Shown here in pieces: positions 5,947-60,546 of a stretch of 64,000 nucleotides of DNA; position 1 is the first letter of the stretch; each line of letters starts with the position of its first letter. Location of the stretch: assembly GCA_965644295.1 (NCBI GenBank), contig CBFFRP010000216.1, forward strand, positions 1-64,000. Reading direction: 5' to 3'. The notes under the pieces are model-generated. The model was given only the letters and a program-made list of their open reading frames with translations. It searched no databases and had not been told where the DNA came from. This stretch comes from Paraphysomonas bandaiensis (lineage: Eukaryota > Protista > Chrysophyceae). The position numbers and the translations under genes are program-made.

Positions 5947-6904
5947 TTACTTCACAGAAGGAATGTAGCTGAGATAGTCAAAGGACCCATCGATGCCAAG
6001 TAGCCTGTCAACCTACAGTAGAAATACCGCATAGTAGATTATATAATCAAAACTTGTATATAACATATTTCATTAACAGGTATGAAGCTACAAGTTAAGC
6101 AGCACGCATGTCCATGTCCTTTCGACATAGAGAAGCGAGGTACTACAATATTACATACACAATAAAAAACGATTACCTCTTTTCCAGCCATCCCTTTTTT
6201 CTTACACAAGTACTTCTTCACACTCCATATATTTTCCGTCCATCTATCAGCACTCTGATGGTTGATTTCAGCTTGACTTGTAATTCTTTTCACTTCTTCG
6301 GGATCATTCGCACTTCTCTTTGATATCTAACATAGATATAATGATGCCATTGTCACAGTAAAGTATAGTTAATTATATACCTGCACGTCCACTTCATGTA
6401 ACTCGTCTCTTAACCGCTTCAACTTTTCCAACTACATGAGCATGCCATTACTAAATCCACTATCAGCAGCATCATGTACATAAACCTACTTTAGAGGCAC
6501 GATCAGTGGCACATCTCACTGCCTGAAGCTCTTTGATTTTAACTTCCTCAGTTTCACAGTTGGATTTTGCCGACTTAATGGATTCTTCAAGAGCTGTGAC
6601 TTTGAGGGCATTTTCATGATAGGCTTGGATAGGGAAACTCCAAAAGAAGTTCGATGAACCAATCTTATCACAGTGAACCAAGGAGTCATCCACTAAACTT
6701 TGATTCTGATCTTTAATCTACAATTAGTACATGTCAATTACAAATGTTTCTCTCATAGAATCTTACAGTCTGCTGTACAACACCTCTTTTAGATGCTAAA
6801 TTTTCAATTTCTTTTAAATTAAAAGGCTCTTTTTGACTATGATAAATATCAAGAATGATTTGACGCTTTTCTTCAGCTGAAAGTCCTTTCTTCTTCTTAC
6901 TCAT
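5947..6904 (-). CDS. MND1: Meiotic nuclear division protein 1 (multi-exon)
   Basis: Manual translation gives MSKKKKGLSAEEKRQIILDIYHSQKEPFNLKEIENLASKRGVVQQT / LVDDSLVHCDKIGSSNFFWSFP / ADRWTENIWSVKKY / VDRLLGIDGSFDYL. These are the Mnd1 hallmark motifs, joined by GT-AG introns. Confidence 0.93.
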
Positions 6905-7167
6905 ACTGTGTATAAAGCCTAAATTGAAATCGGAATAGATGCAGAGTTTCTTGTAATATTACGGAGTTCTATCGTGCTTCTAATTAAGTATTTGGAATTG
7001 GCTCTATGCATATACCACATCAATACATACATACTGCTGGGGATGTATACGGTATACCATATCCACGCTGCTGCTGTATGTATTCGTATACCTCGTTTAG
7101 AAGTGTGTCCTGTATGTGAATACCTATACATTGCCACATTTTCTAGGAATTATACACAACTCTTCTG

Positions 7168-7197
7168 GTACAGCAGTATGAATACATACTGCTGTAC
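7168..7197. promoter_or_regulatory. Palindromic pair of the TACAGCAGTA motif in the MND1/ERCC8 shared promoter
   Basis: gtacagcagtatg-aata-catactgctgtac is a perfect 13-bp inverted repeat. Confidence 0.5.
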
Positions 7198-7400
7198 GTA
7201 TAGGATTTTTACGTAGATATTTCGTACCATGATATACAGCTGGTGTACATATGTACATAGACAGCAGGTACTGCTGTATATATAGAGCAGTACATACATA
7301 CTGCTGTACTGGAGCAGATGCATGTCCTGTTAAGGTATTGATATACACACCTATCGATACAGAGAATAATAACCACATTGGCAATCTCCATGATATTGTT

Positions 7401-8961
7401 ATGAACCCATTGCTTATTAATTGGGAAAGAGAACGACATATTACGGGTTGCATATCCGGATGGGCCACTTCTCGTGAATTGTATCGCATAACACGCTGTC
7501 AGATCCTCAAGTCATCAGTGCTGTCTCTTGAGCTATCTGTACATCATGAAATACATTCAGGACATAGAGGTTCTGTTCATTGTATTGCTGTTGATGACGT
7601 GGAATCAAGATATGTCCTTTCGGGTGGAAATGATGCCAAAATATGTTTATATGACTTAGAGAGCAAGCAGTTGTCGGATTCTACAGCACAGCAAAGTGAC
7701 AGTGGTTCATTGCCAACGATTGTATCCCCTCCGATTTGCAGTACAACACGTAGTTCATCTACTGGTCATGAGTTTTCAGTGACATCTGTTTTCTGGTATC
7801 CTAATGACTCCGGTGCATTCATATCATCTGCATGTGATGGCAAGGTCCTTGTATGGGACACAGATTTATATGAAATAGCAGGGTGTTTTCAATTAAACAG
7901 TAAAGTATATAGTGCCAGCATGCATACCGATGGGGTTAATTCTTTGGTATTGTGCGCCACAGCTGATAAAGGCATACGTCTTTGTGACCTCTCTTCAGGT
8001 GAAACTACGCAACTTACAGCAGTATTCATGTAGCTAATAGAATGCGGATTTTGTATTGTTGCACTTTAGTTACTATCAATTATTAGCTGAACATTTGCAT
8101 GCAGGTGACTGCGCTCATATACTTGGTAATCCTTCTGACTGTGTTTATTCCGCCTCGTGGTGTCCGAACAACGAGTATCATGTCGCATCAGGCAACCAAG
8201 ATGGTAGGGTACAGATATTTGATATTCGTAGAGCTGGTCATCATGCCGTGTTAATGTCCTTTGATAGCCAACAAGACCACACCCATTTTATTAGCAGGTC
8301 CACATATCAAACAGTAAATTGGAATCGCCATGCAGCAGCACAGGCACATAGCAGGGACGTCATAAGCGTAAAGTACTCTCCCAGCGGACAACATCTCATA
8401 TCTTTTGGGAGCGATGGAAAGATACGGCTATGGGAAGCCGCTACAGGCTATTTGCATCCAATCCAGTACTCTCCTGCACGCAAGTCTAAAATGAGTTATT
8501 ATATTGATGTGTTTGATTATACGAATGAAGGAGCTGGAAGTGAATTACTAGCTTATCCTGATTGCGAAGGTAGTATTCTAATTGCATCGCTGTAGAGAGT
8601 GCTTCTATTTTTTGTAATATAACTTACTCCAGTTTTGTGTATAGGCAATATATTGCTGACGCCTATGCACTCGTCCACTGGTCAACCGGTTCACATTTTG
8701 CGTGGACATTTGGATGTGGTAAATGGCACTCAGCTTTTGCCAACTGGTCGTGCCATATCTTGTGGTAGAGATGGCATGATATTCTTGTGGGCACCACCTG
8801 TAGACAGTGAGGTGTTAGAAAGAGCATCCAACCATGGAAAATCAACAGTAGATGCGTGGTCAGATAGTGACAATGACAGCACCGAGGATGGAAACAATAA
8901 TAGAAGATCATTTGTGCCAGCTATTTTAGATATGTACCGACAGGATATTCGTAGTAGATGA
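7401..8961 (+). CDS. ERCC8: WD40 DNA excision repair protein ERCC8/CSA-like (2 introns)
   Basis: WD40 repeats with VESRYVLSGGNDAKICLYDL and GHEFSVTSVFWYPNDSGAFISSACDGKVLVWDT, plus the C-terminal DAWSDSD tail typical of CSA. Confidence 0.88.
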
Positions 8962-9039
8962 TTGTGGTGATTTTTGTGATTGTATTTGTCGTGATAAGTA
9001 AATGTGAAGTTTATTTTATGTGAAGTGATTAATACACAG

Positions 9040-9620: not shown

Positions 9621-10034
9621 TGAAAGTTTTATTATCAGCAAAATGTGCACCAGCTTAATAGCTATTTAATGTCTTTTTATTTAGCAATAGGCGTTAAAAA
9701 CTCGTTCCGATATAGTGGCTAGTTGAATACTAGTCTACTAGTTAGACCTCTACCCATAACTAATCAGCACAAATTCTATTATCCTACTATTTAACGCTAC
9801 AGAAGCTGCTTGTGCGTCGCCGCAAGTACCAAGGTGCAACCACTTCCGTGCTCAATAGCTAGATGGACAAACCAGTCCAGCTAGATAGATATATCTACTT
9901 ATAACTAACTAGTACAAAATCTTATATCCTACTATTTAACGCTACGAGAATTGCTTGTGCGTCGCCGCAAGCACCAAGGTGCGATCATTCTCGCTATATG
10001 ATAGATGTGTATGTCGGCATTGTGCCAAGTGGCT
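9621..10034 (-). mobile_element. Truncated tandem copies of the 3' part of the 44029-44533 retroposon
   Basis: 9680-9855 and 9860-9990 match 44040-44215 (tatcctactat..aacgctac..gcttgtgcgtcgccgcaagcaccaaggtg). Possible TSD cagaggtat at 9612 and 10035. Confidence 0.7.
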
Positions 10035-10650: not shown

Positions 10651-12074
10651 TTAGATATTGAAAACGGAAGTGTAAGATCCACCCTCAGTGGCCAGACCAC
10701 AAGTGTTGCTTCCATATGTGATACGGATATTTCCCTCCTCACCCCAATCAGCCGACCAGGAGTTGCGGATCTACAAAATCAAAGCATTACTCCATGTAAG
10801 CTTGGACATAAAATGTAATACAACACTCACCTTCCACCAGCCGTTCTCCCCATTGTCAACTCCCACCAATTGCACAGCATGGTTAATATCTGTGCCTTTT
10901 CCACAATCCGCCATCACACCGCCTGTGTATGTATTCCAGGTAGTGGCATCCACGCCGATAGAAACGGTACCTGAAGAACATCTATCAGAAAGGAAATAGG
11001 GTAGGCTTCAGTATCGTCATCGACAATAATCAAAAGTACGAATGGATGTGTGGATATGTACACACCGGTGGATAGTACGTAGGTTGTGAATCCCTCCTCT
11101 GTAGCCTTTACATCGTCAGCAAGAATCATTTCGTACCCGTTGACCCCCATGACATAATTAGTCTTAGTTCTATCGCAGCGACCATCTTTGCCGTAGTAGG
11201 AGGTGTAGGGATAATCGGCCTCTGTTACAATACCTCCATTTTCACGCACATAATCAAAAGCGGTTTCCTACATGAGAACAAAGACGATTAAAACATGCAC
11301 CCACAGGACGCACAAAATGAGATAATGAACTGCAAAAATCAGTAGTACTCACAAAGACATAGCGCAATTCTACAGCGACATAATTTTACCTGCAGACCAC
11401 CATTGCAACCCAATTGTCCCTCACCATGGTCACAATCAACAAGTTGTTGAACAGAGAGAGATAGACTTGCGGGGTTGCCAAATAAACGCATACCATCAGA
11501 CTCTATCTGTTCGGCGGCTGCATGAGCCCAGCATGACCCGCAGTGACCCTGTCATGTAGTACGACAAAATTGTTATAACAATGAGGTTACAATGCATCAC
11601 AAACAAAAAGCATCATCAATAAGGTGATTACACCCATTTCAACCAATCTCTCACCTGATCCTTGATAGCAGTGGTCTGCTTTCCAGTGTAGTCAACAGAT
11701 CCATATTTACCATCATAAGCAGGCATATTAACAATAGTCGCATTGAGCTGTTTGAACTTATGGGGAATATTCTTATCGAGGAAAGTCTCTTCAAACTCCT
11801 CTTGAGTCATATCTGAGAATCTCGTGATGCCATGCACAGCACTTCCACCAGAAGCAGCCTCACGAGCATTTCTTTCATCAATTACTTTTAATTGTTCAAC
11901 AAAAATATTGAATCTATGAGTTTCTTCTTCCATAGTCGAGTAACTCTTGCGATGCTCGTGTTTAAAGTCATCAAAGAGTCTCTTAAGCATTACAGGACAA
12001 TCTGTGCTTAGTTTGGATACTTCAGATGCGCCAATAGCACACAGAGTGGCAGCTACAATAGTTTTGTACAGCAT
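10651..12074 (-). CDS. Papain-family (C1A) cysteine protease with I29 propeptide, 4 introns
   Basis: Signal peptide, ERFNIN-like THRFNIF, spliced QGHCGSCWA, NHAVQLVG and IRNSW. Confidence 0.93.
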
Positions 12075-12550
12075 GGTTATAAAGGGTTACTTGAATAGAG
12101 GTAGGTTGCAATAGTAGTTAGCCTGTCGCTGGTCGGATGGTGATATATTAATATATGGGAAACCACGTATGCATCTCAGGAATACACATGCTGCTGTTAG
12201 GTATGGTATGTAAGGCATTGTCCATAGGAGACAAGTACGACTGCAGTACATACGGGCTACATGGATATACTCCAATGATATGTGGTTTACCAAACCAGTT
12301 TAGACGGATTACATGTTGAAAACTGAATATCATACAACGGTACAAGATATGATGACGAGTGTTCTGTCCGCAGGTACCGTCATCTCACTAGATACGCATC
12401 ATCTACTATACGAAGATATGATGCATCTAGATGTATCTGATAGCATCATACGCATATATGCATATATATAGAGAGAGACCTCACATAACAGTCATAATAT
12501 TAACCAGTCTCTATCCCCAGTTACCCAACCCTTACCTAACTACTTGAACA

Positions 12551-15829: not shown

Positions 15830-17800
15830 TGTTGAGTTTTGCTGTTTGTGAGCAATTAAAAGCTGTAGTTTCCAAGATATTAGAATTATATCCGTTACTC
15901 AAAGAATACAGTAGTAGCTAGCTGTAGTATGAGAACCAATAATATGATAGCCATTGTAGTGATAAAACTGAAATATACTGACTGTACAAGATAGTGACGA
16001 TGTAAGATCGTACTAGAAATGGTTGGTGTAGTAGAGATAGAAAGAGTTGGTGAACGTCAATGAATGAAGTATGGTATCTCTTATAATTATATAATATTCC
16101 ATATAAGTGTTAACAAAGGTCTTATTACTAAAAATGTCTATTTCTAACATGGTAGCAGACAGTAGTTCGGAGTGGAAACTTCTTCCTAAATTTGATCAGT
16201 TCGGTGTAGTGAATTGGTCAAAGAATCTGAAAGTGTGGTTGATGAGGAAGAACAGGAACCATCTGGGTCTAGAGGACCGTCCAGTAAGACCAGCAAATAA
16301 TGCGCCAGTGACAGTCCGAAATAAGTACAAGGAGGATCTGGACAAGTGGCTGGAGAGGAAAGACACGTGCATCAGTTCGATATTTGAAGCTGTTCAACCA
16401 GTCGCTGAAGCCCTTGAGATCGTGGATCAGTACTTCCGGGAAAAGGATATGCTCCCGCAGGACCATCCTGATAAAGAGCAGTTAGCGAGTGAACTCATCT
16501 CTAGGTTAATTGTTCGGTTTCGAGGGGAAATCCAATATGAATTAGTTGAATTGAATAAGAAGTTTGCAGGATTCAAAATTCTACCGGGGGAACTCGTGTG
16601 CGCAGCAATCGATCGACTAAACGGCATCTGTCAAAAAATGTCCGAGTTGGGGGAACCACCCACTGACATCGCTAAAAAAACGAAGTTACAGACTGCCCTC
16701 GAAACACGAAGCGATTTGGAGCAATTGTACACCAATCTCTACCTACAAGGTGACATAACCTTTATTGATATGATCACCATATGCAGGAGATACGATCAGG
16801 CAAAAGGTGTCCCGAAAGAAGGCACCGACGAAGTAAACATGAATTCCACTGCTGATGAAAATGAGGTGTGCAGCTATCCCAAATGTGGCAAACGGGGTCA
16901 CTCACAGAAATCGTGCTGGAAGAAGAAGAGAGACCTTAAGATCGCGAAATTAAGAAGGCAGGGAAAGAGTCGTGGCGCTAGGAATCGATCTGAGAGTCGC
17001 AGAGACAACAACGAGAAGAAAAAATCAGATGGCTGCTATGTATGTGGAGACACCAGACATCGTGCGTATAAGTGCAAATTTCGTGCTCAAGTACGTAGTG
17101 ACTCTGCCCAAGGAGACAAAAACCGGCCATTTTTGGACGAAAAGCCTGCAAAACGCACAGATTGGAATCGTTTTTTGCGGAGAGAGGAGCAAGAGGAAGA
17201 TTCGGACTCTGTGAACATGATTATGTATGAGGAACCGCATGATGATTCATGTGTCTCTGAAGAGGTGCTACACACTTCCGATGAACCCGTGTATTTAGAC
17301 AGCTGTGCCTCTAATAAACTGTTCATTGTTAAGGACAGAAATTTCCTTCATACGGTCAAGAAGGAGGATGGAAATATACAGACAACCAGAGCTGGATCCA
17401 GTTTACACTATGAGGAAACTGGAGGCTTTGGCGATTGGACTGACATCAAGATCTGCCCTGGATCAGTCAAGAATATCTGCTCTGGAGGAATACTCCGTTC
17501 TCACGGGTATGGATTGCAGTTGTTGAACAAGCCCACTGTTGTGCGACTTGATACTGGGGAGACTGTATTGGAGGCAACCTACTCAAGCAACGGAATGCCT
17601 TATGTAAATTTACAGGAAATACTTGATCTTCCAAATTTGACAATGCTGGAGGAAGTATATTTGTCCGACAAGGTGCATGAAGATCCGTTAGAGATGTTAC
17701 ACAAGCGCTGTGGACACGTCAGCAAACATAAGCTGATTGAAGCGTTTAAACACAGACTTTTTACCGGGAGCGGATTAACCCGACGACATCTCAGCTGTGA
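15830..17800 (+). mobile_element. 3'-truncated Copia element 2: 5' LTR (15830-16149), PBS, gag, protease, start of integrase
   Basis: TGTTG...TAACA LTR of about 320 bp followed by TGGTAGCAGA. ORF 16134-17800 has two CCHC knuckles, YLDSCAS and LHKRCGH, and is clearly paralogous to element 1 (EAFKHRLFTGSGLTRRHLS vs EAHRRMLFTGSNLQRKHLS). Confidence 0.92.
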
Positions 17801-18464
17801 CCACGTGGCATTTCCCATGCCCTATCTACGTGGCTATAGTAACACGCTATTGAGTCACATGCATGGTTACATTGACTTTTAGGACCCTATGTTGGTTTAG
17901 GACCCTATATCAGGACCCTATATATTGCTTTAGGACCTTCATTGTGTTCAGGATACATATTATGCAACACCATTTGGACATTGGTAATGTACCACAGTGT
18001 ACCTACATATTGAGCCAACGTTCGGGTATGATGTCCAATTTTTATCTGCTGATGATGATGTACGACTATGATCTGCTGCTGGTGACTTCGGTTGATGTGA
18101 AACCTGCTGCAAATTTATATCAAAGTTATGTGGGCCCGTATTCCTGTATAGCAGTTGCAGTACATACTTCCATATAAATACATACATGTATTACCCGTAT
18201 AGCGCCCATGAAGCACACACACTATACACCACTATGACCACACACCGCTGATACTCCCCACCGAGTAGAGGCAGGCAGCAGAGCCTCTGAATCATGCACG
18301 ATATGCATATATCCATACTCACTTCGAAGCCAATCGATATACGTTTTTATACACACGTAGACCTATGTATACCATATACACAGTATACAGAGAATACGTT
18401 GATTCACAGCAAAAAGCTTCACATGCACTCATTTTATGTATGTATGTATGTATTAGTAGGTACG

Positions 18465-19390
18465 TTATGGCCGTTAACGAAGTGTTAAGACACATATCTG
18501 AAAATCCTGCTATAGAATTGCATGCGGACTGTCCTTACTGCGAATTGTCGGGTCACATAAGTGTTGCTTTTGCATTCTCTAACTCGTAGTGTCTCTGCTG
18601 TTAGATCCGGTACATTTTCTGCTCCAGGTGGGCTATTGCACTTTCACATGTCTTATCTAGGATTCGACAAGACATTGAGCTCAGCGGCAAATGCGTACAT
18701 CCTTCGCACGCGAAGCTAATATGTTTACGATATTCCACGTACCATAAATCTTTATTCTGTGAGGTAGATTGATTTAATTGTTTTAACTTGATTTGCAGTT
18801 GTACGAGTAAAGATTACTATTGCATGAGCGGTGATGGACCTACTTCAAGACCACCGCCGTTTGTCGAAAACACGACGTACACAAGCAAAATTTTGAAGAA
18901 TCGTCCATACCAGCCAACATTTCGGCACCCAAACTGATGTGGTTGCTGCTGTCAGCGTTGTTCTTTTCTTTACCCAGTCGGCGAATGTCAAATTTCTTAA
19001 TATTTACATTTATTGGTTACTGATGTATCATGATGTGTTTAACTATTTTCTGCCGCGGGCACCATCTTGGCAGCAGCGGTGAACTCGTAAAATGCTACTT
19101 GTGAAATGAGACCAGGTCTTCTGCTCCGCGCTACGGGTGATGAAGATGAGGGGTTAGGGCGGGGCGTATCCTATATTTGTCGCGGACAGCGAACCAATCT
19201 CAAATGATTAACTCTGCCGAGTTGTCATTTGAGTTGATTTTCTTGCAACACGAAGTGTGTGCAACTTTTTGGTTGAAATTGAACATAAAACCCGAGAACA
19301 TTTTTCTCTGCGGAGAGGGGATGAAATTGCCTACCTTCAACTATATCAAACTGTCACGTCACCTTTTTCTCGGCTTGATCTCCATCGATT
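18465..19390 (+). pseudogene. Inverted, deletion-riddled copy of the 5' two-thirds of the kinase gene, introns included
   Basis: Colinear with the reverse complement of ~20232-21374, e.g. gtgtctctgctgttagatccggtacattttctg and ttttaacttgatttgcagttgtacgagtaaa. Confidence 0.85.
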
Positions 19391-21468: not shown

Positions 21469-21828
21469 TATGAGGAGTACTCAATGCAGAAAATCATTCT
21501 ATTCGATCTCTATCTCTATATGGATGCATGCAATGAAACTGTGCTGTGTATTCATTCAGTTGGCAGAGCAATCAACTGAAATCTATGACCCCACAACACA
21601 CAGGTATAAACCCTGGTTTTCTGGAGGTGACTTTTCAATTTGTAGAGTTAAAAGTTGCTAAAAAGCCTCATTTTTCATTCCACTAAACAGCACTGCGGAG
21701 CATCACCTGGCTGTGTTGAAGATCAAGCGGGAGGGTCTGTCGGTTCAAACTGCTGCGGACTGTGAGGTGAGCCTCTGAGATAGACCAACAAATATCATAA
21801 TCGATACGCGTATCAATTGCAAGCTACG

Positions 21829-24640: not shown

Positions 24641-25208
24641 GTTGTACTGACAGATATTAGCAGATGATTATAAGTAAATGGAGTGAATGACTCTCATGTG
24701 GAGAGAAGAATCTTCACACTGAGCTGATCCATATACTGTACTGTACTGTGCTGTGTACTCTGTATAGCCTATAGGCAGTGCTGCCCGTATGTTGCTGTAT
24801 ATCACGGTTCTTTGATGAAGAGATGAAGTGAATCAGGTTCTTCTTCTGTACATCTGGATACTACAAAATACATACACTCTATACACTAAAACTGTAGGAA
24901 TTCCTACGTAGAGTATATTGCGGTAAGTATACCCATACAGTATATTTTTTTGACCAGTTTTCTCTATTATTATGGGAAGAAATCTGGGGTTTTGAAAAGT
25001 TACCGTTGAGTGTCTTAGTTCAGATTTGCAAAAAAAACACATTAGTTCGACAACAGAGCGACAATATACCCACAACACAGCACGGCACTGCACTGCACTG
25101 CCCTCGCCGATCAACAGAGTGGATCAGGTATATATATGAGACAATACATCTCAAAGTGCTGACTTTACCTCTTCTCACCGAGTGTCAACACCATCATCAT
25201 CTTGTCTA

Positions 25209-27566: not shown

Positions 27567-29474
<1,908 letters not shown>

Positions 29475-29961
29475 TTCAGTTTAGGAATCAGGATATATAT
29501 CTACTAACTACAAGACAGAAGCCTTCATCCCATATATAATATGCACACATACATACATGTGTTGATTTTAAGACACACAGCAGCTGACCACCACATGGAA
29601 TACACTGTATAATCCTGCTGTATTCTACATGCGATGGACTGATAACTGCTGTGTTTTTGTCTATAGAAACTGCTGCTGTTGTTGGTGGTACAGTGTGTAC
29701 AGAGTATGTGTATGTATCTGCACGACAGTTGTGGACTGCTGCTGTATGTGCATCGCATTGTCATGAGCCCAAAGGGTCTCCCCTTCCCACACCAACTGGA
29801 CAATAATACCATCCTTACCTGCAATTAATTTATCATTATTTCATTACTTTTATGGGTTGTTCAGAAAGAAGTTCTCGTCATGATGTCGTAATTAAGGTTT
29901 GAATTAGTAGTCCCTCTCCCTAACTATCAGCTGTGCTTTATATCGAGGATTATATTCATAG

Positions 29962-33112: not shown

Positions 33113-33625
33113 GACGAGACAGAGTGATAAGCAACTTACAAGCCGCTGTGTATGCTGCCAGTGTTATTGTTTGCTTCTACTATCACTGGAACTCATTCAA
33201 CAGTGTACTGTCTACCGTCCTATAGCACGAATACCATCTAGCCGAAGCAATGGACCTCATATGCTAATCTCAGTCAACGATTAGTTTGTGGGCAATAGGA
33301 GCATATGGGGAACAGTGTCTCCAAAAACTAGTTGTGAAATTTTCAAATACAACATCAAACATCAACATCAAGAATACGGCGATGTACTCTGTGGAATACA
33401 CCGACCAATAGAAGCAAAGAGAGTTCTGACAGTAGAATACAGCCGTATGCAGTATGCCGTATACAGCAGTATGGAGTTGGTGAGTATGCTGCAGCTGGTC
33501 AGTGCCTGCAGTGGGCTGAAGTGACCAGATGGATCATAGCTGCGCTCATATAAGACACTCTGTCACTACTATCAACACTCTGTAATCGTCTACTTGGAGT
33601 GTTACTTATCGTAGTCTATTGCAAG

Positions 33626-37703: not shown

Positions 37704-38666
37704 TTACACTTCCGTACGACAATTTTTTTGCCTCAAACTAAGAATACTATATTCCTTGAATGCTCTTTCATTGGCTTTACACTTAATCCCAACCAAGGGA
37801 ATCGACTTGGAATGTTTCAATTTTTCGACACCAGCGCGTGTCATTATGTACTTCTGTTTTTTCTTTATAAAACGCGCTCTACTAGTCACTTGGGTGCCGG
37901 AAAGTATTCCGTCATCAAAACTCGTCGATGCGGACGGCATAGTAGATTCTAAGAGCTGGGTAAACTCACAACTGCGTCGACACCAATTATCGAAGGCATT
38001 TTTCCAGAATAAGAGTCCACTCTTCTTGACAATGTAATACTTATTCTGTCCTGTAGCTATGGGAAAAGCCTGACCCTCATATTTGTTCAAAAACGTAAAT
38101 ACAGCATATGATACACCGGGCCAGTTGTGATTGAAGTAATCATCAATCATGATAATTCCATTCGGACTAAGAGTTGAAAACGCCAGCTCCAGATCAGATA
38201 GAGTACACTGGCTCGTGTGACACCCGTCCACACTGAAAAGTGCTACTGGGCGACCTTTCGTTAAAAGAAAAACGTCCGCTGCAGTCATTTGTGTCGAATC
38301 TGCCTGGAAAACGGACACATGTTCATTCATAAAACTAGTTGTATGTGTGGTATAGCGCCGCATGTTGCTCTTGAATATTTCCATGCTACCGTTACCAGAC
38401 TTGTCATAATTAAACTCTTGCATATCAAACACATCTATCGCCACTGCCATACAATTGGAATTTCGAGGAAGATTATTAACCATTGATATAAAAGACTTTC
38501 CATGGTGTACTCCGATCTCCACGATAGCATTCAACTCACTTGCTTTGCGCAGTGTGTTCATTATATACTTAACTGTATTGCGGGCTATGAACCATCCTGA
38601 TGGTTCTTCCTGGGACAAGCTCATGGAGAACAATGCCAGCAACAGTATGAAATAGAAAGCATGCAT
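37704..38666 (-). CDS. Class I SAM-dependent methyltransferase (Methyltransf_24-like) with signal peptide, intronless
   Basis: VEIGVHHGKSF, AIDVF, FSVDGCHT and IMIDDYFNHNWPGV motifs, with a hydrophobic N-terminus. Confidence 0.85.
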   Translation of the reverse strand: MHAFYFILLLALFSMSLSQEEPSGWFIARNTVKYIMNTLRKASELNAIVEIGVHHGKSFISMVNNLPRNSNCMAVAIDVFDMQEFNYDKSGNGSMEIFKSNMRRYTTHTTSFMNEHVSVFQADSTQMTAADVFLLTKGRPVALFSVDGCHTSQCTLSDLELAFSTLSPNGIIMIDDYFNHNWPGVSYAVFTFLNKYEGQAFPIATGQNKYYIVKKSGLLFWKNAFDNWCRRSCEFTQLLESTMPSASTSFDDGILSGTQVTSRARFIKKKQKYIMTRAGVEKLKHSKSIPLVGIKCKANERAFKEYSILSLRQKNCRTEV

Positions 38667-40739: not shown

Positions 40740-40761
40740 GCAATAGCAAATTTGATAGCTG

Positions 40762-41859: not shown

Positions 41860-42149
41860 CAGATAGAGGTCAGTATATATCAACTGCGTCTACTTATCGC
41901 TTCAAAATGATGCAGCGTTGACCTTCGCATGTGATCTGGATATACTTGCTGTCCGTGTCTGTGTATCCTCCATCCGACGAGAAATGTCGCCGCATGTTCC
42001 ACGCATACCAGCATTCCGGTATACGGTGGTACGAAGACGTAGTTCAATTTCCCGTATACGGATGTTGGCCCGGAGTCCTGAGACGGACCGTGTAATATAT
42101 TACAGTATTGCTGCTCGCTCTCTACGATACATAAGCACGAAGAAGTTTG

Positions 42150-43410: not shown

Positions 43411-44028
43411 AAGGCCATACAGTCTCTGTATTCACACGTGTAAATACAATGCTTGATAATCAATTCCTTATATTTCCACCATTTTTCTAATCTTCAAGTG
43501 TTACCGTCGTTGTGTTTTCCTTTGCTAACACGTCTGTCCACCTTCTTCCTGCTTCAATTCACTCTAATTTCAATATAGTGTAAAAGTGGTAGTGTATCGA
43601 GCCCAACAAATTATATTATGAGAAAATAAAATGATTTTTCTAACTACTACTTTTACTACAATTTTATCAATATATTTATTTGGAATAAAAAGGATATATC
43701 TTATTCTAAAAAATTGGACAAGGGATGAAGTTGCACATTAGTTGTGCAGCATTTGCCTCTACGTTTTCACTTTCTTTGGTAGTTCTAGTGGTGCTCTATT
43801 GTGATGTGTCTATACGTTCCCAACTATACGACATATCAAATGGCGAAACAAATTACCCTGCAGGGGTTTATTAGTCAAGACATCTGCCAGCATATCCCTT
43901 GTAGTTAAGTACTCCAGCTTAATGCAACTTTATCATGTTGTTCTTTGACCAATGCTTGTCTTACACGTAGCTATTTCGACCTGTATTTGCCTCCTTCCTT
44001 TGTCATGAGGCTGAGGTTCGACATATTG

Positions 44029-44533
44029 AAAGTCTTATTATTAGCAATAGGCGTTAAAAACCTGTACCAACTTAGTAGCTAGATGAATGCTAGACAAACT
44101 AGTTAGACCTCTACCTGTAACTAATCAGTACACACTTTTTTTATCCTACTATATAACGCTACGGAAGCTGCTTGTGCGTCGCCGCAAGCACCAAGGTGTG
44201 ACCACTTCCGCTCTAAGTTCTTAAGGTAAACATCCCGAATGCTTGACTTCAGCAGGCAGCCCTATACCCCGGTTACCCTTCCGGTGGTCCCTGTCCCGGA
44301 TGCCCTTGAGGTGGGTCCATTCCCGGATGCCTGTTTATTCGTCACGGCCCAAAGACGTCTACACAAGTGACACTTATTGATGTCCCTTGTACCACACAAG
44401 CATTCGGCTATGAGTGGGCAGAAGAATATCTGCTGACTATGTTTGCGGCTCACGTTAGTTTCCCAGAGAGAATCTCTCCGGTACTTATCCCCCAGAACAC
44501 CACGAAAAGGGACGAGTCCGACTTTGTTGAGGG
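44029..44533 (-). mobile_element. ~505-bp non-LTR/SINE-like retroposon with 16-bp TSD
   Basis: gaggttcgacatattg at 44013-44028 and 44534-44549 flanks it. Homologues occur at 9410-9540 and 9621-9990. Confidence 0.85.
44446..44533 (-). ncRNA. Candidate HDV-like self-cleaving ribozyme (degenerate)
   Basis: Minus-strand order: P1 CCUCAAC, P2 CGGaCUCGU, P3 (C/A)CC, L3 UUUUCGU, GGU, P1' GUU(C/G)UGG, GGG, P4 CCGGAGAG-AUU-CUCUCUGG, J4/2 ACUAAC, P2' GUGAGCCG. Confidence 0.5.
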
Positions 44534-44637
44534 GAGGTTCGACATATTGTCCTGAAACACGACAGGTGGGTCAAGTTTGTAACCGTGCTCACATGTGAAC
44601 TCATGTATCTTCATCACACAGGATAACTTCCCCATAT

Positions 44638-45058
44638 TGGCAGCGTAACTAATCGCTGCTTTGACCATTTAGTGAGTGCTGCTGAGTGTTGCGACCGCGT
44701 GCTTCTACCTATGTACACATTACTTAATTCAGCGCTTCCCTGCCCACTCACTGCATATTCAGCGCTAAATACAATGTGATAGTGATGTAGCTAGTTGCTC
44801 CATTCTGAGCGCGTACTTATGTAGATCCGGGTGGGGGCCGGGTGGGTACCTAACTAATACTTGATTAAGCCCCATATGTTATTTGCTAGCTATCTACTGA
44901 ACCCAACTAGCTACATCATTATCACACGGTATTCAGCGCTGAATATGCAGTGAGAAACGCTGAACTAAGCAAAATGTGTACATAGATAGAAGTGCGCGGT
45001 CGCAATACTCAGCAGCACCCACTAGAGGGCCGCACGCAGTGATTAGTTACGCTGTCAG
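44638..45058. mobile_element. Foldback element / MITE with ~155-bp imperfect TIRs
   Basis: cagcgtaactaatc...ctcactgcatattcagcgct...tgatgtagctagttg is mirrored by caactagctacatca...agcgctgaatatgcagtgag...gattagttacgctg. G-rich core; no TSD seen. Confidence 0.85.
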
Positions 45059-46149: not shown

Positions 46150-48198
<2,049 letters not shown>

Positions 48199-48670
48199 AT
48201 CTTCTAGAGCTGATGAATAATTCCGTAAATATCTACAGAGTGTTTATAACACAACGGTACAAATGCTACGTACGATCCACTGAGCAATAACCACCCTAGT
48301 GATCGCTACCTATCGAGATATGAATAATTAACACACTAATTAGCAGGCAGGTCCGCCCGTCCCTAACACACCACACCACTTACATCTGTATACTATTGTA
48401 TTCCGCCCCATCATACACTCTGTATCGTTTGTACACAGAAATGGACTTGTTTTCCACACAGCAGGAAATAACCCTTTATTTTTAGGAGAATTACAATATT
48501 TCTAATTTCTTGACAACAAATCACTGATTTTGTAATTCGACTGCACTTTCATGTAGATCTGGAGTACGTGTAGGATAAGAAGAACATGCTGATACAACAG
48601 GCAGAGCTGAGGCGAATACTAGTCTATATGACAGTGTGTATGATTCTATAATTACCATACTCAGAGGGCT

Positions 48671-51471: not shown

Positions 51472-52075
51472 ACTAATACGGGTTAATTTAATGAGAAGCT
51501 ACGATAACACCCGTGGAGTAAATGTTGTGAATGATAACAAGTCAAGCGTAAAGCCCCACAGCAGTAGCAGTACACAGCAGATATATTGCTAGCAGTGTAC
51601 GGTGTGTACCTGCTATACTACTGCTGGCCTGTATACACACTCTGTGGTATGACGGTATGCTGGGCACCATTTGTGCTGTATTCACAGATTCCGGTATACA
51701 GCGGAGTACAGTGTATATGGTATATTGTACATGAATCCACTGGTGTGGATATGCACATATAGCCAATGAGACAGCTGCGTACACGTGGATTACCATGACA
51801 TTCATGGCATACCGCATCCACCCCACCATACCTTCTTCCAACTCAACTATCATGTTTCCGTACGTCGCAGCACACACCTTCTCTTTCGTTCCAGTCATTG
51901 TATGATCATATATGTGTTTTAGTAGCCTCTCGTCCAAGCTCTGTCTGTTAGTCCACTGTAGAGGTTGTACTGAGGACTCTCCCATCTTGATATCGATCAA
52001 GATTGGATTGTCTTATCATATGATTCATATCATAATTCATAATATAGCGATACATAAGAAGACTTTAATGTGGAT

Positions 52076-55114: not shown

Positions 55115-55526
55115 TCAATGTGTAACATTTCGGGCAATATACCTACTTCCTGAAAGTTTTTGATCTTCAGCTTCTTTCTCTATTAATATATTCGCAGCTT
55201 TCTGTAACTCTTGGATCGTTCTATCATACTCAACTTTACTTTGTTCTTTCCTACTCAATGCTTCATTAGCTTTGAATAATCTATTCCTCAGGGCTGATAT
55301 GTCCCTCTGAGTGATGGCTTTTTCTTCTTCAAGAGATGCTATCGATTTATCCAACTCTAGTTTATCCGCTATCAATTGTTCCTTGTACTCTGTCTGGGAA
55401 TATGTAAGCACGGAGATTGATGAACAACAGACTGACACATACCACTAACTTCTCGCTTTCAGACACCTCAGCACTCGCACCAGATATATTGGCAAACATA
55501 TTATCAACACTGCTCTTCTCCTCCAT
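55115..55526 (-). CDS. DIP13/SSNA1(NA14)-like coiled-coil protein (1 intron)
   Basis: EEEKAITQRDISALRNRLFKANEALSRKEQSKVEYDRTIQE resembles the SSNA1 core as recalled. Confidence 0.65.
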
Positions 55527-55654
55527 CAGCACGTAAGGACAACGGTGCGAAGGGTCACACACAGGCAGGTTTATTATCAAAGCAGCATACCAATATTGTG
55601 AAGAGTGATATCTCGACTCTACTGCTGTGTGATATGTGTACTCCAGTACTGCTG

Positions 55655-55750
55655 TATGTAGGTAGGTAGGTAGGTAGGTAGGTGTATGTAGGTACTGTAG
55701 GTAGTGGGTAGGTACTGCTGTATTATGTAGGTAGGTAGGTAGGTAGGTAC
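55655..55750 (+). repeat. (GTAG)n microsatellite inside a bidirectional promoter
   Basis: Two tracts of gtaggtaggtagg interleaved with tactgctgtat. Confidence 0.9.
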
Positions 55751-55869
55751 ACTTCTGCATCTGAGAACTGTCTAGATGTAGGTCGATTGCTGCATCATCT
55801 TAACCCTCCGTGAATGTCCTTCCATGATGCTTAAAGAGAATAGGTGTTGATTTGCAGTCACTATTCGTT

Positions 55870-57936
55870 ATGCCTGTAAATACATTTGAATGCGGTGAGA
55901 TACTATCCGGTAAGTGGGAGCTGGTTAGAAAAATTAGTCAGGGCTCGTTCGGGGAGCTGTTCGTTGCTAGAGACATCACCAGTGGCACTGTATATGCCAT
56001 TAAGATTCAGAGCAGTGAGACTGATGCTCGTTTGAAGGTATTGATAACAGTTCAGTATGATGCTGAGATATGTTGATGACTGATTCGTTAGTGGGAGAGT
56101 GAAGTGTTAACTGCAATGAACGACTCCGATCTGACCCCTCAGATTGTACTGCTGGACCAATACGCCCCAGAACATGATTTTATCGTCATGCAACTTTTGG
56201 GTGAGGATATGTCTGCTCTACGGCGTCGAGCACGACAAAATACATTTAAAGGATTGCCTCTGCCGGTTGTCGCGTATTTGTCATTGCAAATGCTCAAATG
56301 CATTGAAGCTCTTCACCTGAAAGGATTCGTACATAGGTATGATTGAGCAAACTGCAGTTATGTATAACCAAGTGATCGTTTTCATGATAGAGACGTAAAA
56401 CCTGCGAACTTCGTCCGCAAGTCCCACACAAGCACTGAGTTCTGTATTATAGACTTTGGAATCGCAAAGCAGGTACTTATAAGCGTGCCCACATTTGATG
56501 TTTTGCTCATCTTGGGAAGCATGTTAGCACGTCTAGTGGAAAGATACGCTGTGCCCGAGAATCGGCTGAATTTCGAGGCACCACGATGTATGCCTCTCTT
56601 CACAGTCATGATCTCCAAGATCTTTCTTTCCGCGATGATTTATGGAGTTTTCTGTTCGTTTTTATTGACCTCTTTGTTGGTATGTATATTTGAATTAGTT
56701 GCTGTTACTAAAGGAGTACTGTGTTATAGGCAAGCTTCCCTGGACAGAAGAGGCTAGGCGTAAAGAAAAATCTAGTGTGGCTGATATCAAGAGAAAGTAT
56801 GTTGGTGACCCTACTCAACTCACGAAGTGGATTTTCTCTCAGATACATCAACAGCATCGCTCTCAGGTGGTCAAGTGTTGATTTTAGACCAGAATATATG
56901 TTTCAATGTAGCTGCATTACAGGTCGAGATGCTGGATGTGTTAAGCGAGAGAATTACAGATGTGGTGGAGTATATTGGGGTAAGCGTATTGATGTGCTTC
57001 TGGTGTTTTCGTCATGAATATTGATGTATAGTGGTGTGGTTAGGTGCGTTATCTTACCGCGTATATTGCAGGGGCTCGGATACAAAAATATGCCTAATTA
57101 CAACAAGCTTCGCACTTACCTAAATGAGCTATTGTCCTCTCAAAGTGTATCTCAGGAAGCACTTGATGTACCCAATAAGCTCTCGGAGCTCCCAACTTCA
57201 TTAGTTGATGTGTCTTGCATTGACTATGTTAATGGTTCGTTCAATTGGAAATGCGAAAGTTTATACCCTGGCGAATTCAGAGGAGATGTGCCTGATGTAG
57301 CTTATGAGATGGATATTCGTCAGTATGAGAATGTGAGTCAGTTTCAGAGTGTGATCACAGCGAGAGCTTGGTATGGTGTAAACGTATGCAAGAAAGCGTC
57401 GCCAACCAGCGCCACTCATATCTCAGGAAATGGTAGTGAGAACTTATGCAATGGTGCTGTATTTGACGTTGAAGAAAGTAAAAGTGATTATATTACCCCT
57501 TTGCATCAGTTATCCCGCTTGTGGAAATCTTTATACATGGCGCTGCTAAGTGTACCAAAGGAGTATTTACAGTGGAGTACAGTGAGTAGTCTGAAGCATC
57601 TACTAGACAACTGCCGTTGGTTTTATGCCATTGGTCAGTACACTTTTTCCAATCCGGAGAATACAATAGTATCGTCCTCTGACTTTTTCCTGCTACAAAA
57701 GGTATGTATGCAATGACTGTGACAGCATATGCCATGTTTTTCTAGTTGCTGCTGTAATATTGCGATACGCTTGTGGTACTCTGATGTGTTGTATCAGGAT
57801 ATTTACGATTTTATGGAAATATATAGACAACAGCTTCAGGTGTTACCTGAGATTGTTTCATTTTCGAAGCAAAAGGTAATTTTGATAACGGTGAAGTATA
57901 TTGTTCGCATGTGACATTTTCGTGTAGGATGTATAG
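55870..57936 (+). CDS. CK1-group kinase (TTBK-like), multi-exon; 3' end tentative
   Basis: ISQGSFGELF, AIKI, VMQLLGED, HRDVKPANF, IIDFGIA, FRGTTMYAS and LPW. Confidence 0.88.
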
Positions 57937-58470
57937 CACTATATGGAATATGGTGGACCGAGCTTGTATTGTAGTGGAGATAGTTAGTGGGGAAAATATG
58001 GTAACACGCCAATGTGAGCTAAACAGATTAAAGTCATGCGTACAATTTTAGTTGATTTAATGAAACCTTTAAAAATGGATCATGTTGTTGTCGTTTTAAT
58101 ATGAGTAACATGACTTTCAATGATACTATGAATGTTTCGTAGTTCTACTTTCTAGTTATAATACACTGCGATCTTCTTACCATTTAGGTTGTTAATCCTT
58201 AAATCTTTAATAGATGGAATAGCCCAACATGCAACACAAACATTAGAGGCTAGTGAAAATATCGATTTACGTATTAATTTCGAATAACGCAATGCGGTAT
58301 ATCAAAAGTCCTATTTTCGCTAGGAGCGTACACGACGGTGTCAAAAAAAATCGGCTCAATATAAGAGCCGCACTAGAATACTACTTTTTCAAAATTGTTT
58401 CAAAAGGCAAATACGCAAAAACTAACTATCATTATTTTCATGGCTTCCCAATTCTTATGTACATAACACC

Positions 58471-59480
58471 TTAGCACGATGATGAAATTTTAAGCATTCT
58501 GACTGCAGGATCAGGTGAAGGTTGTTCAGTGACGAGTTCCTTGTGGTCTTGTTTCACACCCTCTATTGCAGCGGTTGTCGAATCGTCAGCTGTGATAAGT
58601 ATGAGCGCAGACAGAAGCCTGTCATCTTTTCCCCCACACTCATCTAATATCAAACGTTTTCTGTCTACTTTCCAGATGCCATGGTGTCCACTCACCATCC
58701 AGGACTCATTTAACTCCTCCGGGATAGCTAAGACATTGTCCCTACCAGATATGGGCTCTATCCACGCGACGTCTTCTCTCTTTCGCTTCAAGGATGCAAT
58801 CTCCTCTTCAACACTTTCCCATCCTCCATTTCTTCCCTCAAGTCCTCCATGAACGGCTAATATACGGCCCATATTAGGAACACTTATGTCTACCACATGC
58901 TCGAGAGAGTTCAGAAACTGGTAGTGTGAAAACGGTAGACAGGACAGTAATCCATCTCTGTCTGCGTATTTCACACCATAAGACAAAAAAGTAGCTGCAG
59001 CATCATAAATTGAATCTGGGAAAGATCCGTTTACGCTACCCGCCCACCGCCTGCCCTGTAGATGCATTGTTGACGCACCAACGCCTTCATAGAAAGTCGA
59101 TGCCTTCACCTTCGGAATAAAGCCATCACATGTGTGAGAATGATCAATTCCTTCAGTGTCCAAATACTTCAGCATAGCAAAATCATGATTTCCACAGAGA
59201 AATCGGAATTTATAATGTGAATGAGTCTGAGGAAGAGCAACTAAAAAATCCAGAACTTCTCTTGTGTTGGGTCCACGATCGCAGTAGTCGCCTGAGTATT
59301 GTCATTATTATCAGCATCTGTCACACGCATAAACTTACCCAAAAATATAACATTAGTATTTGCGTGACATAAGGAACTAAATCTATTGAGTACAGTGTAC
59401 AGGTTGGACCACAGTGAGGTGGTCTTAGCCATCTGCCCGTGAATATCCCCTATAAACGCGAATAGAGACCGATGAGACAT
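58471..59480 (-). CDS. RLPH-type (Rhizobiales-like) PPP metallophosphatase (1 intron)
   Basis: GDIHG, FLGDYCDRGP, FLCGNHD, MHLQGRRWAG...SIYDAAATFLSYGV, VSGHHG and LILDECGG. Confidence 0.85.
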
Positions 59481-59889
59481 TATATACACAATAAAGCACG
59501 CTGTACGTCTACATTTCCATGAGACAATATGATCGACCGATTGAAGCACTCGCTCTGAGAGTGTCCGCAGCGCAGTTGTGATGGGCATGTATTTACATCC
59601 CTCCATAACATATTCAAATCTACTGACGAACCAAAACAGGGTATACGTAAATACGAGATATCTATTGGATAATATGAATGTAGAGGATGTAGCTATTGTG
59701 CTGTATTTGAGAGGTATACAGCCGTCATAGCATACAGCAGTGGTGTCTGTCCAGCAGGCATACATACAGTACACATACCTCTAGCAGATGTACATGGCAT
59801 GTATATCACCACACGAGACGCACAGACTGAGGGAGACTCTTAATCAGAATTCTCCTCACACTATCCCGTATATCTTCCCTCTCCTATTC

Positions 59890-60546
59890 ATGAAGCATAT
59901 TATATTAGGCTCCGGATCACTCAGTCGCAAAGCGATTCTATCTGAAGCGGGAATTTCTTTCACAGCTGTAGCAGCAGATATCGACGAGCGTGCCATTGGA
60001 AACCGATCGAGCGCTGAATACGCACAAGAATTAGTTTTATCGATTGCTCGTGCTAAAGCTGATTGTATTATTCAGAAGTTGCCAGAGGATTTGCCAAGTA
60101 GGACATTACTGACAGCAGACACTGTTGTCACACATAATAATAAAATTATTGAGAAACCGCGGTCACAAGAAGAGGCCCGTGAAAATTACAAGAGCTATGG
60201 ACTGTATCCGTGCTCATTAGTTAGTGGAATAGTATTAACGGACGTGGTAACTGGAAGCAGAGTCGAGGTGATATCGATATTTCTGAGTATAATCTATATT
60301 GTAAAAATGCCTGTATAGGGAGTTGATGTTGCGACAGTGCGGTTTAAACCGTTTTCAGACGATGCTGTTGAAAAAATTATAGAGGAAGGCAAGTTATTTA
60401 AATGTGCTGGAGGTATTATGATTGAGAACCCTTTGGTGTCGCCATTTATCGATAGTATTGATGGTAATGAAGACACAATCAGAGGATTATCGATCGAGTT
60501 ATCCCAACGTCTTTTTAGGCAGCTTTATGCTCAGCAGGAGAGCTGA
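59890..60546 (+). CDS. Maf-family nucleotide pyrophosphatase (1 intron)
   Basis: IILGSGSLSRKAIL, DIDE, LLTADTVV, EKP, CAGGIMIE and IRGL. Confidence 0.92.

What the first reader, a model, noticed from the sequence alone, without database searches (positions are those of the whole stretch)
5947..60546. Near-universal head-to-head gene pairing with a fixed spacer size
Ten divergent pairs by ATG position: 6904/7401, 12074/12551, 21468/21829, 24640/25209, 29474/29962, 33112/33626, 48198/48671, 51471/52076, 55526/55870 and 59480/59890. Spacers are about 345-605 bp. The apparent singletons at 38666 and 41859 also face decayed plus-strand coding-like sequence. Every TE found lies in a tail-to-tail gap. 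This suggests a genome built from bidirectional-promoter modules joining functionally unrelated genes.
Basis: seen in the sequence. Interest (0 to 1): 0.75.

Follow-up and report, generated by a model that had tools for sequence, protein, structure and literature searches.

The report
Head-to-head gene pairs in Paraphysomonas
In this stretch of a marine flagellate (Paraphysomonas) genome almost every gene sits back-to-back with a neighbour across a short, repeat-free promoter gap of about 350-600 bases; this is a strong example of a layout already described in related algae, not a new kind of genome.

Summary
The window (G000:C216:1-64000, Paraphysomonas, a chrysophyte) carries 24 non-transposon genes. 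22 of the 23 junctions between neighbours switch strand (p = 3e-6). That gives 11 head-to-head pairs.

Every transposon or repeat lies in a tail-to-tail gap; none lies in a divergent spacer. The spacers are about 14-fold enriched for a near-palindromic motif, TACWGCWGTA, which sits centrally.

"Near-universal" and "fixed" overstate the case. In an independent 200 kb of another contig, 65-71% of junctions alternate by automatic calling and 78-79% after curation. Spacers there range from 118 to 960 bp (median 545).

One pair is two papain paralogues, so the partners are not always unrelated. No tool supported a decayed plus-strand gene facing 38666.

The architecture is already described in another ochrophyte, Ectocarpus: 61.7% of genes in divergent pairs, median spacer 409 bp, a shared nucleosome-free region, and uncorrelated expression of partners. 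Diatoms and Cyanidioschyzon show a similar bias. I file it as a new, possibly more extreme, member of a known kind.

First readers noted the same pattern on two other pieces of this genome (s1-436851, s1-450532). A genome-wide count from the existing JGI annotation would settle how extreme it is.

The parts
418..5190 (-). Copia-type LTR retrotransposon, 3' of the Mnd1 gene (not in a promoter spacer)
   Evidence: RVT_2, gag and pre-integrase Pfam hits. LTR-like repeat 1-269 / 5203-5450.
6905..7400 (.). Spacer 1 (496 bp) between Mnd1(-) (CDS about 6042-6904) and a WD40 gene(+) (7401 or 7251 to 8961)
   Evidence: Mnd1 HTH E 2.6e-12 and LZ3wCH; WD40. Six CTGCTGT/ACAGCAG motif copies.
12075..12550 (.). 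Spacer 2 (476 bp) between two papain-like cysteine protease paralogues: 10651-12074(-), 5 exons, and 12551-13540(+), intronless
   Evidence: I29 and Peptidase_C1 on both strands. 51% identity aligned from Met1. The plus copy is an exact transcriptome protein match.
16134..17882 (+). Truncated copy of a multicopy transposon ORF, in the tail-to-tail gap
   Evidence: At least 76 genomic matches, many 100% identical; full ORFs up to 1596 aa elsewhere. No Pfam hit.
18472..19352 (+). Decayed inverted paralogue of the 5' part of the neighbouring kinase gene (probable pseudogene)
   Evidence: 67% identity over 1086 nt, inverted, to 20298-21362. Kinase catalytic-loop remnant. Only tiny ORFs remain.
21469..21828 (.). 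Spacer 3 (360 bp) between a protein kinase(-) (19633-21468) and an intronless MTHFR-like gene(+) (21829-22662)
   Evidence: Pkinase E 8e-21 and MTHFR E 1.6e-4.
24641..25208 (.). Spacer 4 (568 bp) between an LRR gene(-) (23309-24640) and an unknown gene(+) (25209-26456)
   Evidence: LRR Pfam hit. Gene models.
29475..29961 (.). Spacer 5 (487 bp) between prolyl-tRNA synthetase(-) (27567-29474) and an ankyrin gene(+) (29962-30564)
   Evidence: tRNA-synt_2b, ProRS-C_1 and Ank. Five motif copies.
33113..33625 (.). Spacer 6 (513 bp) between RabGAP-TBC(-) (about 32025-33112) and a PX-domain gene(+) (33626-35834)
   Evidence: RabGAP-TBC E 5e-24; PX. Motif at 33463.
37704..38666 (-). Unpaired methyltransferase gene. 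Its upstream region carries the motif at 38820, but no plus-strand partner was found.
   Evidence: Methyltransf_24. Motif. No Pfam hit for ORFs in 38667-40761.
41860..41983 (.). Spacer 7 (124 bp or more; plus start uncertain) between an M28-like peptidase(-) (40762-41859) and a DUF5898 gene(+) (to 43348)
   Evidence: Exact transcriptome protein match for 40765-41859. DUF5898 E 1.9e-9. Gene models.
44013..44797 (.). Short multicopy retroposon in a tail-to-tail gap
   Evidence: Copies at 67-94% identity across C80 and at window 9663-9848.
48199..48670 (.). Spacer 8 (472 bp) between SRP54(-) (46150-48198, 8 exons) and a GH5-like gene(+) (48671-50280)
   Evidence: SRP54 E 1e-43; Cellulase E 7.5e-4. 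Gene models.
51472..52075 (.). Spacer 9 (604 bp) between a weakly supported small gene(-) (about 51029-51471) and an ABCG transporter(+) (52076-54613)
   Evidence: ABC_tran and ABC2_membrane. The minus partner has only an ab initio score of 14.
55527..55869 (.). Spacer 10 (343 bp, with a (TAGG)n microsatellite) between a coiled-coil gene(-) (about 54774-55526) and an unknown 8-exon gene(+) (55870-57936)
   Evidence: Weak coiled-coil Pfam hits. Gene models. Three motif copies.
59481..59889 (.). Spacer 11 (409 bp) between a metallophosphoesterase(-) (58471-59480) and a Maf-like gene(+) (59890 or 59788 to 60546)
   Evidence: Metallophos and Maf E 5e-20. Motif at 59734.
62026..62613 (-). Last gene of the window (unknown, minus strand), with motifs upstream at 62769 and 62967. 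Any partner would lie at or beyond the window end.
   Evidence: Exact transcriptome (MMETSP) protein match. Motifs.

Best explanation
The window is an ordinary gene-dense part of the Paraphysomonas nuclear genome. Genes are laid out head-to-head in pairs.

Shown here:
- Each pair shares a short gap, typically 350-600 bp from ATG to ATG.
- That gap carries no transposons or repeats.
- Its middle holds copies of a near-palindromic element, TACWGCWGTA, often flanked by (TATG)n-like repeats.
- Transposons are confined to the long 3' (tail-to-tail) gaps.

Inferred, by analogy with Ectocarpus:
- The spacer is one nucleosome-free promoter region from which RNA polymerase II starts in both directions, with each gene using its own start site.
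- The partners are not co-regulated operon-like units.
- The layout is kept because promoter regions are costly and fragile. Insertions and breakpoints are tolerated only in the 3' gaps. A gene, or a new gene copy, is expressed most easily beside the free side of an existing promoter. Where transposons pile up, pairs break and unpaired or tandem genes appear.

The bias reaches beyond this window but is not universal: about 96% of junctions alternate here and about 65-79% in an independent 200 kb.
For: Window:
- 22 of 23 junctions alternate, p = 2.9e-6. Strands are backed by Pfam and exact transcriptome proteins.

Independent C80:1-200000:
- 34/43 junctions alternate after curation (p = 8.5e-5).
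- 65-71% alternate by fully automatic calling.
- 36/46 (78%) alternate by my manual recount of the gene list, after correcting two strand calls and one split gene that Pfam or a 413-aa ORF contradict.
- Coding sequence 600-1600 nt upstream of confident starts lies on the opposite strand 0.42-0.48 of the time, against 0.07-0.11 on the same strand.

Spacers (28 in all):
- Median 482 bp, IQR 357-574. Convergent gaps have median 1968 bp and tandem gaps 2619 bp.
- Repeats occur in 0/28 divergent spacers against 19/28 convergent gaps (Fisher p = 3e-8). They occur in 8 of the 9 tandem gaps in C80.

Motif CTGCTGT/ACAGCAG:
- 35 copies in 12.8 kb of spacers against 3.9 expected, placed centrally.
- Replicated in C80 alone: 1.88/kb against 0.26-0.38/kb.
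- It also lies upstream of the unpaired genes at 38666 and 62613.

Published parallel in Ectocarpus: 61.7% of genes in divergent pairs, divergent intergenic median 409 bp against tandem 2293 bp, a shared nucleosome-depleted region below 600 bp, and partner expression uncorrelated at r = 0.04.
Against: - No TSS, chromatin or expression data could be reached, so 'shared promoter' is inference.
- Only 0.4% of the genome (two contigs) was examined, and the window was picked because it looked striking.
- Gene models come from a home-made predictor trained on the same 264 kb. Several partners (51471, 55526 and the weak C80 calls) lack homology support.
- The automatic count in C80 (65-71%) is no higher than published values for Cyanidioschyzon (66%) and only slightly above diatoms and Ectocarpus (61-62%).
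- The motif shows only a weak orientation bias and has not been shown to act as a promoter element.
Confidence: 0.68

Rival explanations
1. The near-perfect alternation is a local property of a gene-dense, transposon-poor block that was picked because it looked striking. Genome-wide, Paraphysomonas is no more alternating than other ochrophytes (about 60-65% of junctions).
For: Automatic calling in the independent 200 kb gives 65-71%, within the published range. The first 52 kb of C80 is repeat-rich and has several same-strand neighbours.
Against: Curated C80 counts are 78-79% (recount in the full report). Two other first-reader notes report runs of 13-14 alternating genes on other pieces, though these are unverified. 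The window result survives correction for about 1300 windows.
Confidence: 0.22
2. The alternation is produced mainly by a mutational bias towards inverted duplication, which creates head-to-head and tail-to-tail paralogue pairs. Selection on shared promoters is not the main cause.
For: There are two inverted paralogue pairs in 64 kb: papain/papain head-to-head and kinase/pseudo-kinase tail-to-tail.
Against: The other ten pairs join unrelated families. The duplicated MTHFR-like gene moved alone, sharing only its CDS plus or minus about 40 nt. Inverted duplication does not explain repeat-free spacers or motif enrichment.
Confidence: 0.05
3. The pairs are functional, co-regulated two-gene modules, like operons, kept together because their products work together.
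For: Papain/papain is clearly related. RabGAP-TBC and PX could both act in membrane traffic.
Against: Most pairs are plainly unrelated, for example SRP54/GH5-like, ProRS/ankyrin, kinase/MTHFR-like and Mnd1/WD40. In Ectocarpus the expression of partners is uncorrelated.
Confidence: 0.03
4. The pattern is an artefact of hand or ab initio gene calling. Antisense shadow ORFs were taken for partner genes, or same-strand genes were merged.
For: The minus partners at 51471 and 55526 have no homology support. The predictor was tuned on this window.
Against: Twenty of the 24 genes have Pfam domains or exact transcriptome proteins on the called strand. The strand blocks are of single-gene size. Same-strand internal gaps are short GT-AG introns.
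Confidence: 0.02

Closest known systems
Alternating gene orientation and short divergent intergenic regions in the brown alga Ectocarpus (Cock et al. 2010, as cited in Bourdareau et al., bioRxiv 10.1101/2020.03.09.980763 / PMC7784034)
   Same: Both are ochrophyte stramenopiles. Both show a strong tendency for neighbours to lie on opposite strands. Divergent intergenic regions are short (median 409 bp there, 476-545 bp ATG-to-ATG here) while tandem ones are long (2293 bp there, about 2600 bp here). Partners are functionally unrelated.
   Different: In Ectocarpus 61.7% of genes are in divergent pairs. Here the figure is 92% in the window and 77% in the independent region (34 of 44 genes in the curated list). 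The Ectocarpus genome is larger and less dense. The shared nucleosome-free region and uncorrelated partner expression were measured there and are only inferred here. No TACWGCWGTA-type motif is mentioned in the passages read.
Compact eukaryote genomes with an excess of opposite-strand neighbours in the 64-species survey of Davila Lopez et al. 2010 (PMC2871058, Table S1)
   Same: All show a deficit of co-directional pairs: Cyanidioschyzon merolae 34%, Cryptococcus neoformans 37%, Thalassiosira pseudonana 39%, Naegleria 42%.
   Different: The window has 4% co-directional junctions and the independent region 21-35%. If the curated figure holds genome-wide, this would be the lowest value in that series. 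If the automatic figure holds, it is within it.
Mammalian, plant and yeast bidirectional promoters (head-to-head pairs with start sites less than 1 kb apart)
   Same: Two divergent genes less than 1 kb apart share one regulatory gap, which holds symmetric or orientation-tolerant elements.
   Different: [quoted passage not shown] Here it is the default arrangement, and the partners look unrelated.

Membership tests
Head-to-head (bidirectional) gene pair, standard definition | Two adjacent protein-coding genes on opposite strands, transcribed away from each other | tested here: met
   Eleven pairs with strand support from Pfam or transcriptome proteins.
Head-to-head (bidirectional) gene pair, standard definition | Transcription start sites less than 1000 bp apart | tested here: met
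   ATG-to-ATG distances are 124-604 bp. Start sites lying between the ATGs must therefore be closer than that. The start sites themselves were not mapped.
Bidirectional promoter (functional sense) | One regulatory region or nucleosome-free region drives transcription in both directions | not testable with these tools
Indirect support only: a central, orientation-tolerant motif and repeat-free spacers.
Bidirectional promoter (functional sense) | Co-expression of the two partners | not testable with these tools
   No expression data could be reached. In Ectocarpus partners are uncorrelated.
Ectocarpus-type alternating genome organisation | Significant genome-level excess of opposite-strand neighbours over 50% | tested here: met
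   Window 22/23. Independent C80 65-79%, with p from 0.03 to 8.5e-5 depending on calling. Only 264 kb was sampled.
Ectocarpus-type alternating genome organisation | Divergent intergenic regions much shorter than tandem or convergent ones | tested here: met
   Medians are 482 bp (divergent), 2619 bp (tandem) and 1968 bp (convergent). Mann-Whitney p = 4e-6 and 8e-8.
Operon-like or functionally linked gene pair | Partners share a function, pathway or family | tested here: not met
   Only papain/papain are clearly related, and RabGAP/PX arguably so. The other pairs join unrelated families.

The most novel reading that the evidence does not exclude
Paraphysomonas may have an almost obligate head-to-head genome. 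On this reading, co-directional neighbours would be at most about 20% genome-wide, lower than in any eukaryote I could find described. Promoters would be built around a lineage-specific symmetric element (TACWGCWGTA). Unpaired genes would arise mainly where transposons or gene decay have destroyed a partner. That would make it the clearest natural case of promoters being intrinsically bidirectional and of the gene pair being the unit of genome rearrangement.
Probability: 0.3. Interest if true: 0.6.

Novelty: new member of a known kind. Interest (0 to 1): 0.4.

Why it matters
If the bias is as strong genome-wide as in this window, Paraphysomonas would be a natural test-bed for several questions. 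How do eukaryotic promoters set direction? Why do transposons avoid promoter gaps? Can two genes share a nucleosome-free region and still be regulated independently?

There are practical uses too:
- The pairing rule and the TACWGCWGTA motif can sharpen gene prediction in chrysophyte genomes. A start codon about 350-600 bp from a divergent start is a strong prior.
- The 350-600 bp spacers are ready-made compact bidirectional promoters for genetic tools in stramenopiles.

If the bias is only Ectocarpus-like, the finding simply extends a known ochrophyte feature to a heterotrophic chrysophyte.

Tried and rejected
A truly genome-wide count was therefore impossible.
- Rfam and tRNA scans of the window were empty.
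- The first HMM and DP parameter sets were too conservative and missed small multi-exon partners. They were re-tuned against the 24 homology-supported window genes.
Conservation of a pair across species could not be tested.
- A search for a directional core-promoter word within 240 nt of the ATGs found only a weak sense bias of ACAGCAG and (CATA)n. Base composition upstream of the ATGs showed no 5'-UTR signature.
- Pfam on ORFs in 38667-40761 found nothing.
- Literature searches for a Paraphysomonas or chrysophyte report of this layout found none. The Paulinella HLI retrogene pairs are specific to one gene family and are not a genome architecture.
- Spliced gene models were searched exon by exon by reference.
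- The large protein searches were not used, because family scans sufficed.


Full report
**Origin of the window**

The window is G000:C216:1-64000, in a 62.6-Mb assembly of 669 contigs. It is eukaryotic: about 40% GC, a copia retrotransposon, and short GT-AG introns. Three single-exon ORFs match transcriptome-derived proteins exactly. The papain cluster carries an MMETSP1103 record with taxon id 36769, which is Paraphysomonas, a colourless chrysophyte. A preprint mentions an annotated JGI assembly of P. imperforata CCMP1604, Parimp1_4. I found no genome paper.

**Gene map of the window**

No eukaryotic gene finder was on hand, so I wrote two. The first is a 7-state strand/frame HMM. The second is a spliced-model dynamic program with trained donor, acceptor and start matrices. 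I checked them against Pfam hits on exon ORFs. Spliced models were searched exon by exon by reference, and the joined proteins were not submitted anywhere.

From left to right the window holds:
- copia TE(-), 418-5190
- Mnd1(-), ATG 6904 / WD40(+), ATG 7401
- papain-like(-), ATG 12074 / papain-like(+), ATG 12551
- a truncated multicopy TE ORF(+), 16134-17882
- a decayed kinase paralogue(+), 18472-19352
- kinase(-), ATG 21468 / MTHFR-like(+), ATG 21829
- LRR(-), ATG 24640 / unknown(+), ATG 25209
- ProRS(-), ATG 29474 / ankyrin(+), ATG 29962
- RabGAP-TBC(-), ATG 33112 / PX(+), ATG 33626
- methyltransferase(-), ATG 38666, unpaired
- M28-like(-), ATG 41859 / DUF5898(+), ending at 43348
- retroposon, 44013-44797
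- SRP54(-), ATG 48198 / GH5-like(+), ATG 48671
- small unknown(-), ATG 51471 / ABCG(+), ATG 52076
- coiled-coil(-), ATG 55526 / unknown(+), ATG 55870
- metallophosphoesterase(-), ATG 59480 / Maf(+), ATG 59890
- unknown(-), ATG 62613

The ORF at 16134-17882 has at least 76 matches in the genome, many 100% identical, so it is a transposon.

**Is it more than chance?**

Among 24 non-TE genes, 22 of 23 junctions switch strand (p = 2.9e-6). Counting the kinase pseudogene as a gene gives 22 of 24. I had fetched it only because a paralogue of the MTHFR-like gene lies elsewhere on that contig.

Pfam on 40 long ORFs there separated genes from a LINE, a copia element, low-complexity tracts and a tandem array. 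The counts were:
- Curated: 34 of 43 junctions alternate (79%, p = 8.5e-5).
- Fully automatic: 65-71%.
- Automatic with three corrections: 36 of 46 (78%). This is my manual recount of the list. It corrects two strand calls, contradicted by a Suc_Fer-like Pfam hit of E 2e-38 and by a 413-aa ORF, and one split ThrE gene.

A calling-independent profile agrees. Coding sequence 600-1600 nt upstream of confident starts lies on the opposite strand 0.42-0.48 of the time, against 0.07-0.11 on the same strand. This measure favours divergent neighbours, because tandem gaps are long.

So the bias is real beyond the window, but 'near-universal' describes only this gene-dense block.

**The spacers**

Over all 28 divergent spacers (11 in the window, 17 in C80) the median is 482 bp and the IQR 357-574. 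79% lie between 340 and 660 bp, and the extremes are 118 and 960 bp. Convergent gaps have a median of 1968 bp and tandem gaps 2619 bp. The size is constrained, not fixed.

Interspersed repeats, found by self-comparison of the 264 kb, cover 0 bp of the 28 divergent spacers. They cover 24-30% of convergent and tandem gaps. The split is 0/28 against 19/28 gaps (Fisher p = 3e-8). Eight of the nine tandem gaps in C80 contain repeats. This fits the idea that unpaired genes arise where insertions or decay have removed a partner.

**A promoter-like motif**

An unbiased k-mer comparison of the window's spacers with the rest of the window put ACAGCAG/CTGCTGT on top: 20 copies in 4.8 kb against 17 in 59 kb. 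The extended consensus is TACWGCWGTA(TG). It occurs in both orientations and sits centrally. It also lies about 150 nt upstream of the unpaired genes at 38666 and 62613.

The motif replicates in C80: 1.88/kb in divergent spacers against 0.26-0.38/kb elsewhere. There is a weak tendency for the nearer gene to read ACAGCAG on its sense strand 120-240 nt upstream. Other first-reader notes on this genome describe the same motif. I derived it before reading them.

**Are the partners unrelated?**

Mostly yes. The exception is the papain pair: 51% identity from Met1, one copy with five exons and one intronless. There is also a tail-to-tail kinase/pseudo-kinase inverted duplication.

The MTHFR-like gene has an 84%-identical copy on C80. 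That copy shares only the CDS plus or minus about 40 nt with the window copy. It again faces minus-strand coding sequence, and it appears frame-broken. So genes can move alone and end up next to another gene's 5' side. The pair is not duplicated as a unit in this case.

**Comparison with what is known**

In a 64-species survey the co-directional fraction ranges from 97% (Leishmania) down to 34% (Cyanidioschyzon). Cryptococcus is at 37% and Thalassiosira pseudonana at 39%.

- 61.7% of genes lie in divergent pairs.
- Divergent intergenic regions have a median of 409 bp, against 2293 bp for tandem pairs.
- Pairs closer than 600 bp share one nucleosome-depleted region.
- Partner transcript levels are uncorrelated, r = 0.04.

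The Paraphysomonas layout matches this in every respect I could test and is quantitatively stronger. Co-directional junctions are 4% in the window and 21-35% in the independent region. Against the 66% alternation of Cyanidioschyzon, the pooled 56/66 is significant (p = 5e-4). The unbiased C80 sample alone is only borderline (p = 0.03-0.05).

**Mechanism**

Shown:
- head-to-head pairing
- short, repeat-free spacers
- central motif enrichment
- transposons confined to 3' gaps
- mostly unrelated partners

Inferred, by analogy with Ectocarpus:
- Each spacer is one nucleosome-free promoter region that fires both ways from separate start sites, without obligatory co-regulation.
- Purifying selection against insertions and breaks in spacers, together with easier expression beside an existing promoter, maintains the alternation.

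**Limits**

- Only 264 kb was sampled.
- The gene models are home-made.
- There are no TSS, chromatin or expression data.
- The single metagenome scan gave no close relative.

**Verdict**

This is a new, possibly more extreme, member of a known kind. Two other first-stage notes report the same pattern on other pieces of this genome (s1-436851, s1-450532); both are unverified.

Noticed in passing
L009:6169-9999 (G000:C80:66169-72342, + strand): A 2058-aa non-LTR retrotransposon ORF. Its first 1277 residues, the part scanned, combine an N-terminal SET/PR methyltransferase domain with the usual endonuclease and RVT_1 reverse transcriptase. This is an unusual domain addition for a LINE.
   Followed up: no
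window 16134-17882 (+): A truncated copy of a very young, abundant transposon family. There are at least 76 genomic matches, many 100% identical, and full ORFs of about 1594-1596 aa elsewhere. The first 555 aa have no Pfam domain.
   Followed up: partly
window 18472-19352 versus 20298-21362: An inverted, tail-to-tail duplication of the 5' kilobase of a protein kinase gene (67% nucleotide identity). The plus-strand copy keeps a catalytic-loop remnant but only tiny ORFs, so it is probably a pseudogene.
   Followed up: partly
window 10651-12074 (-) and 12551-13540 (+): Head-to-head papain-like protease paralogues (51% identity). One has five exons and the other is intronless, so the intronless copy may be a retrocopy that landed at the free side of its parent's promoter.
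   Followed up: partly
window 21829-22662 and L002 (G000:C80:309925-310729): The intronless MTHFR-like gene has an 84%-identical second copy. The homology stops about 40 nt either side of the CDS. The second copy looks frame-broken and again faces minus-strand coding sequence. Another first-reader note (s1-443839) flags this gene as a possible bacterial transfer.
   Followed up: partly
window 55640-55760: A (TAGG)n microsatellite interleaved with three copies of the TACTGCTGTA motif inside a divergent spacer. Several other spacers carry (TATG)n/(CATA)n-like runs.
   Followed up: no
G000:C80:45932-48740 (L007): A tandem array, period about 840 bp, of three 196-aa ORFs with a weak sulfotransferase match. 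All are on the plus strand, making this a local exception to the alternating layout.
   Followed up: no
G000:C80:3-2070 and 14869-15689 (L003, L004): Tracts that stay open in four or five reading frames on both strands. These are low-complexity or tandem-repeat DNA that an ab initio predictor scores as strongly 'coding'. They are a trap for gene callers in this genome.
   Followed up: no
G000:C80:194294-199999 (L022, - strand): A single ORF of at least 1902 aa encoding a multidomain type I polyketide/fatty-acid synthase (AT-DH-KR-ACP-KS order on the fragment). It runs off the end of the fetched stretch.
   Followed up: no
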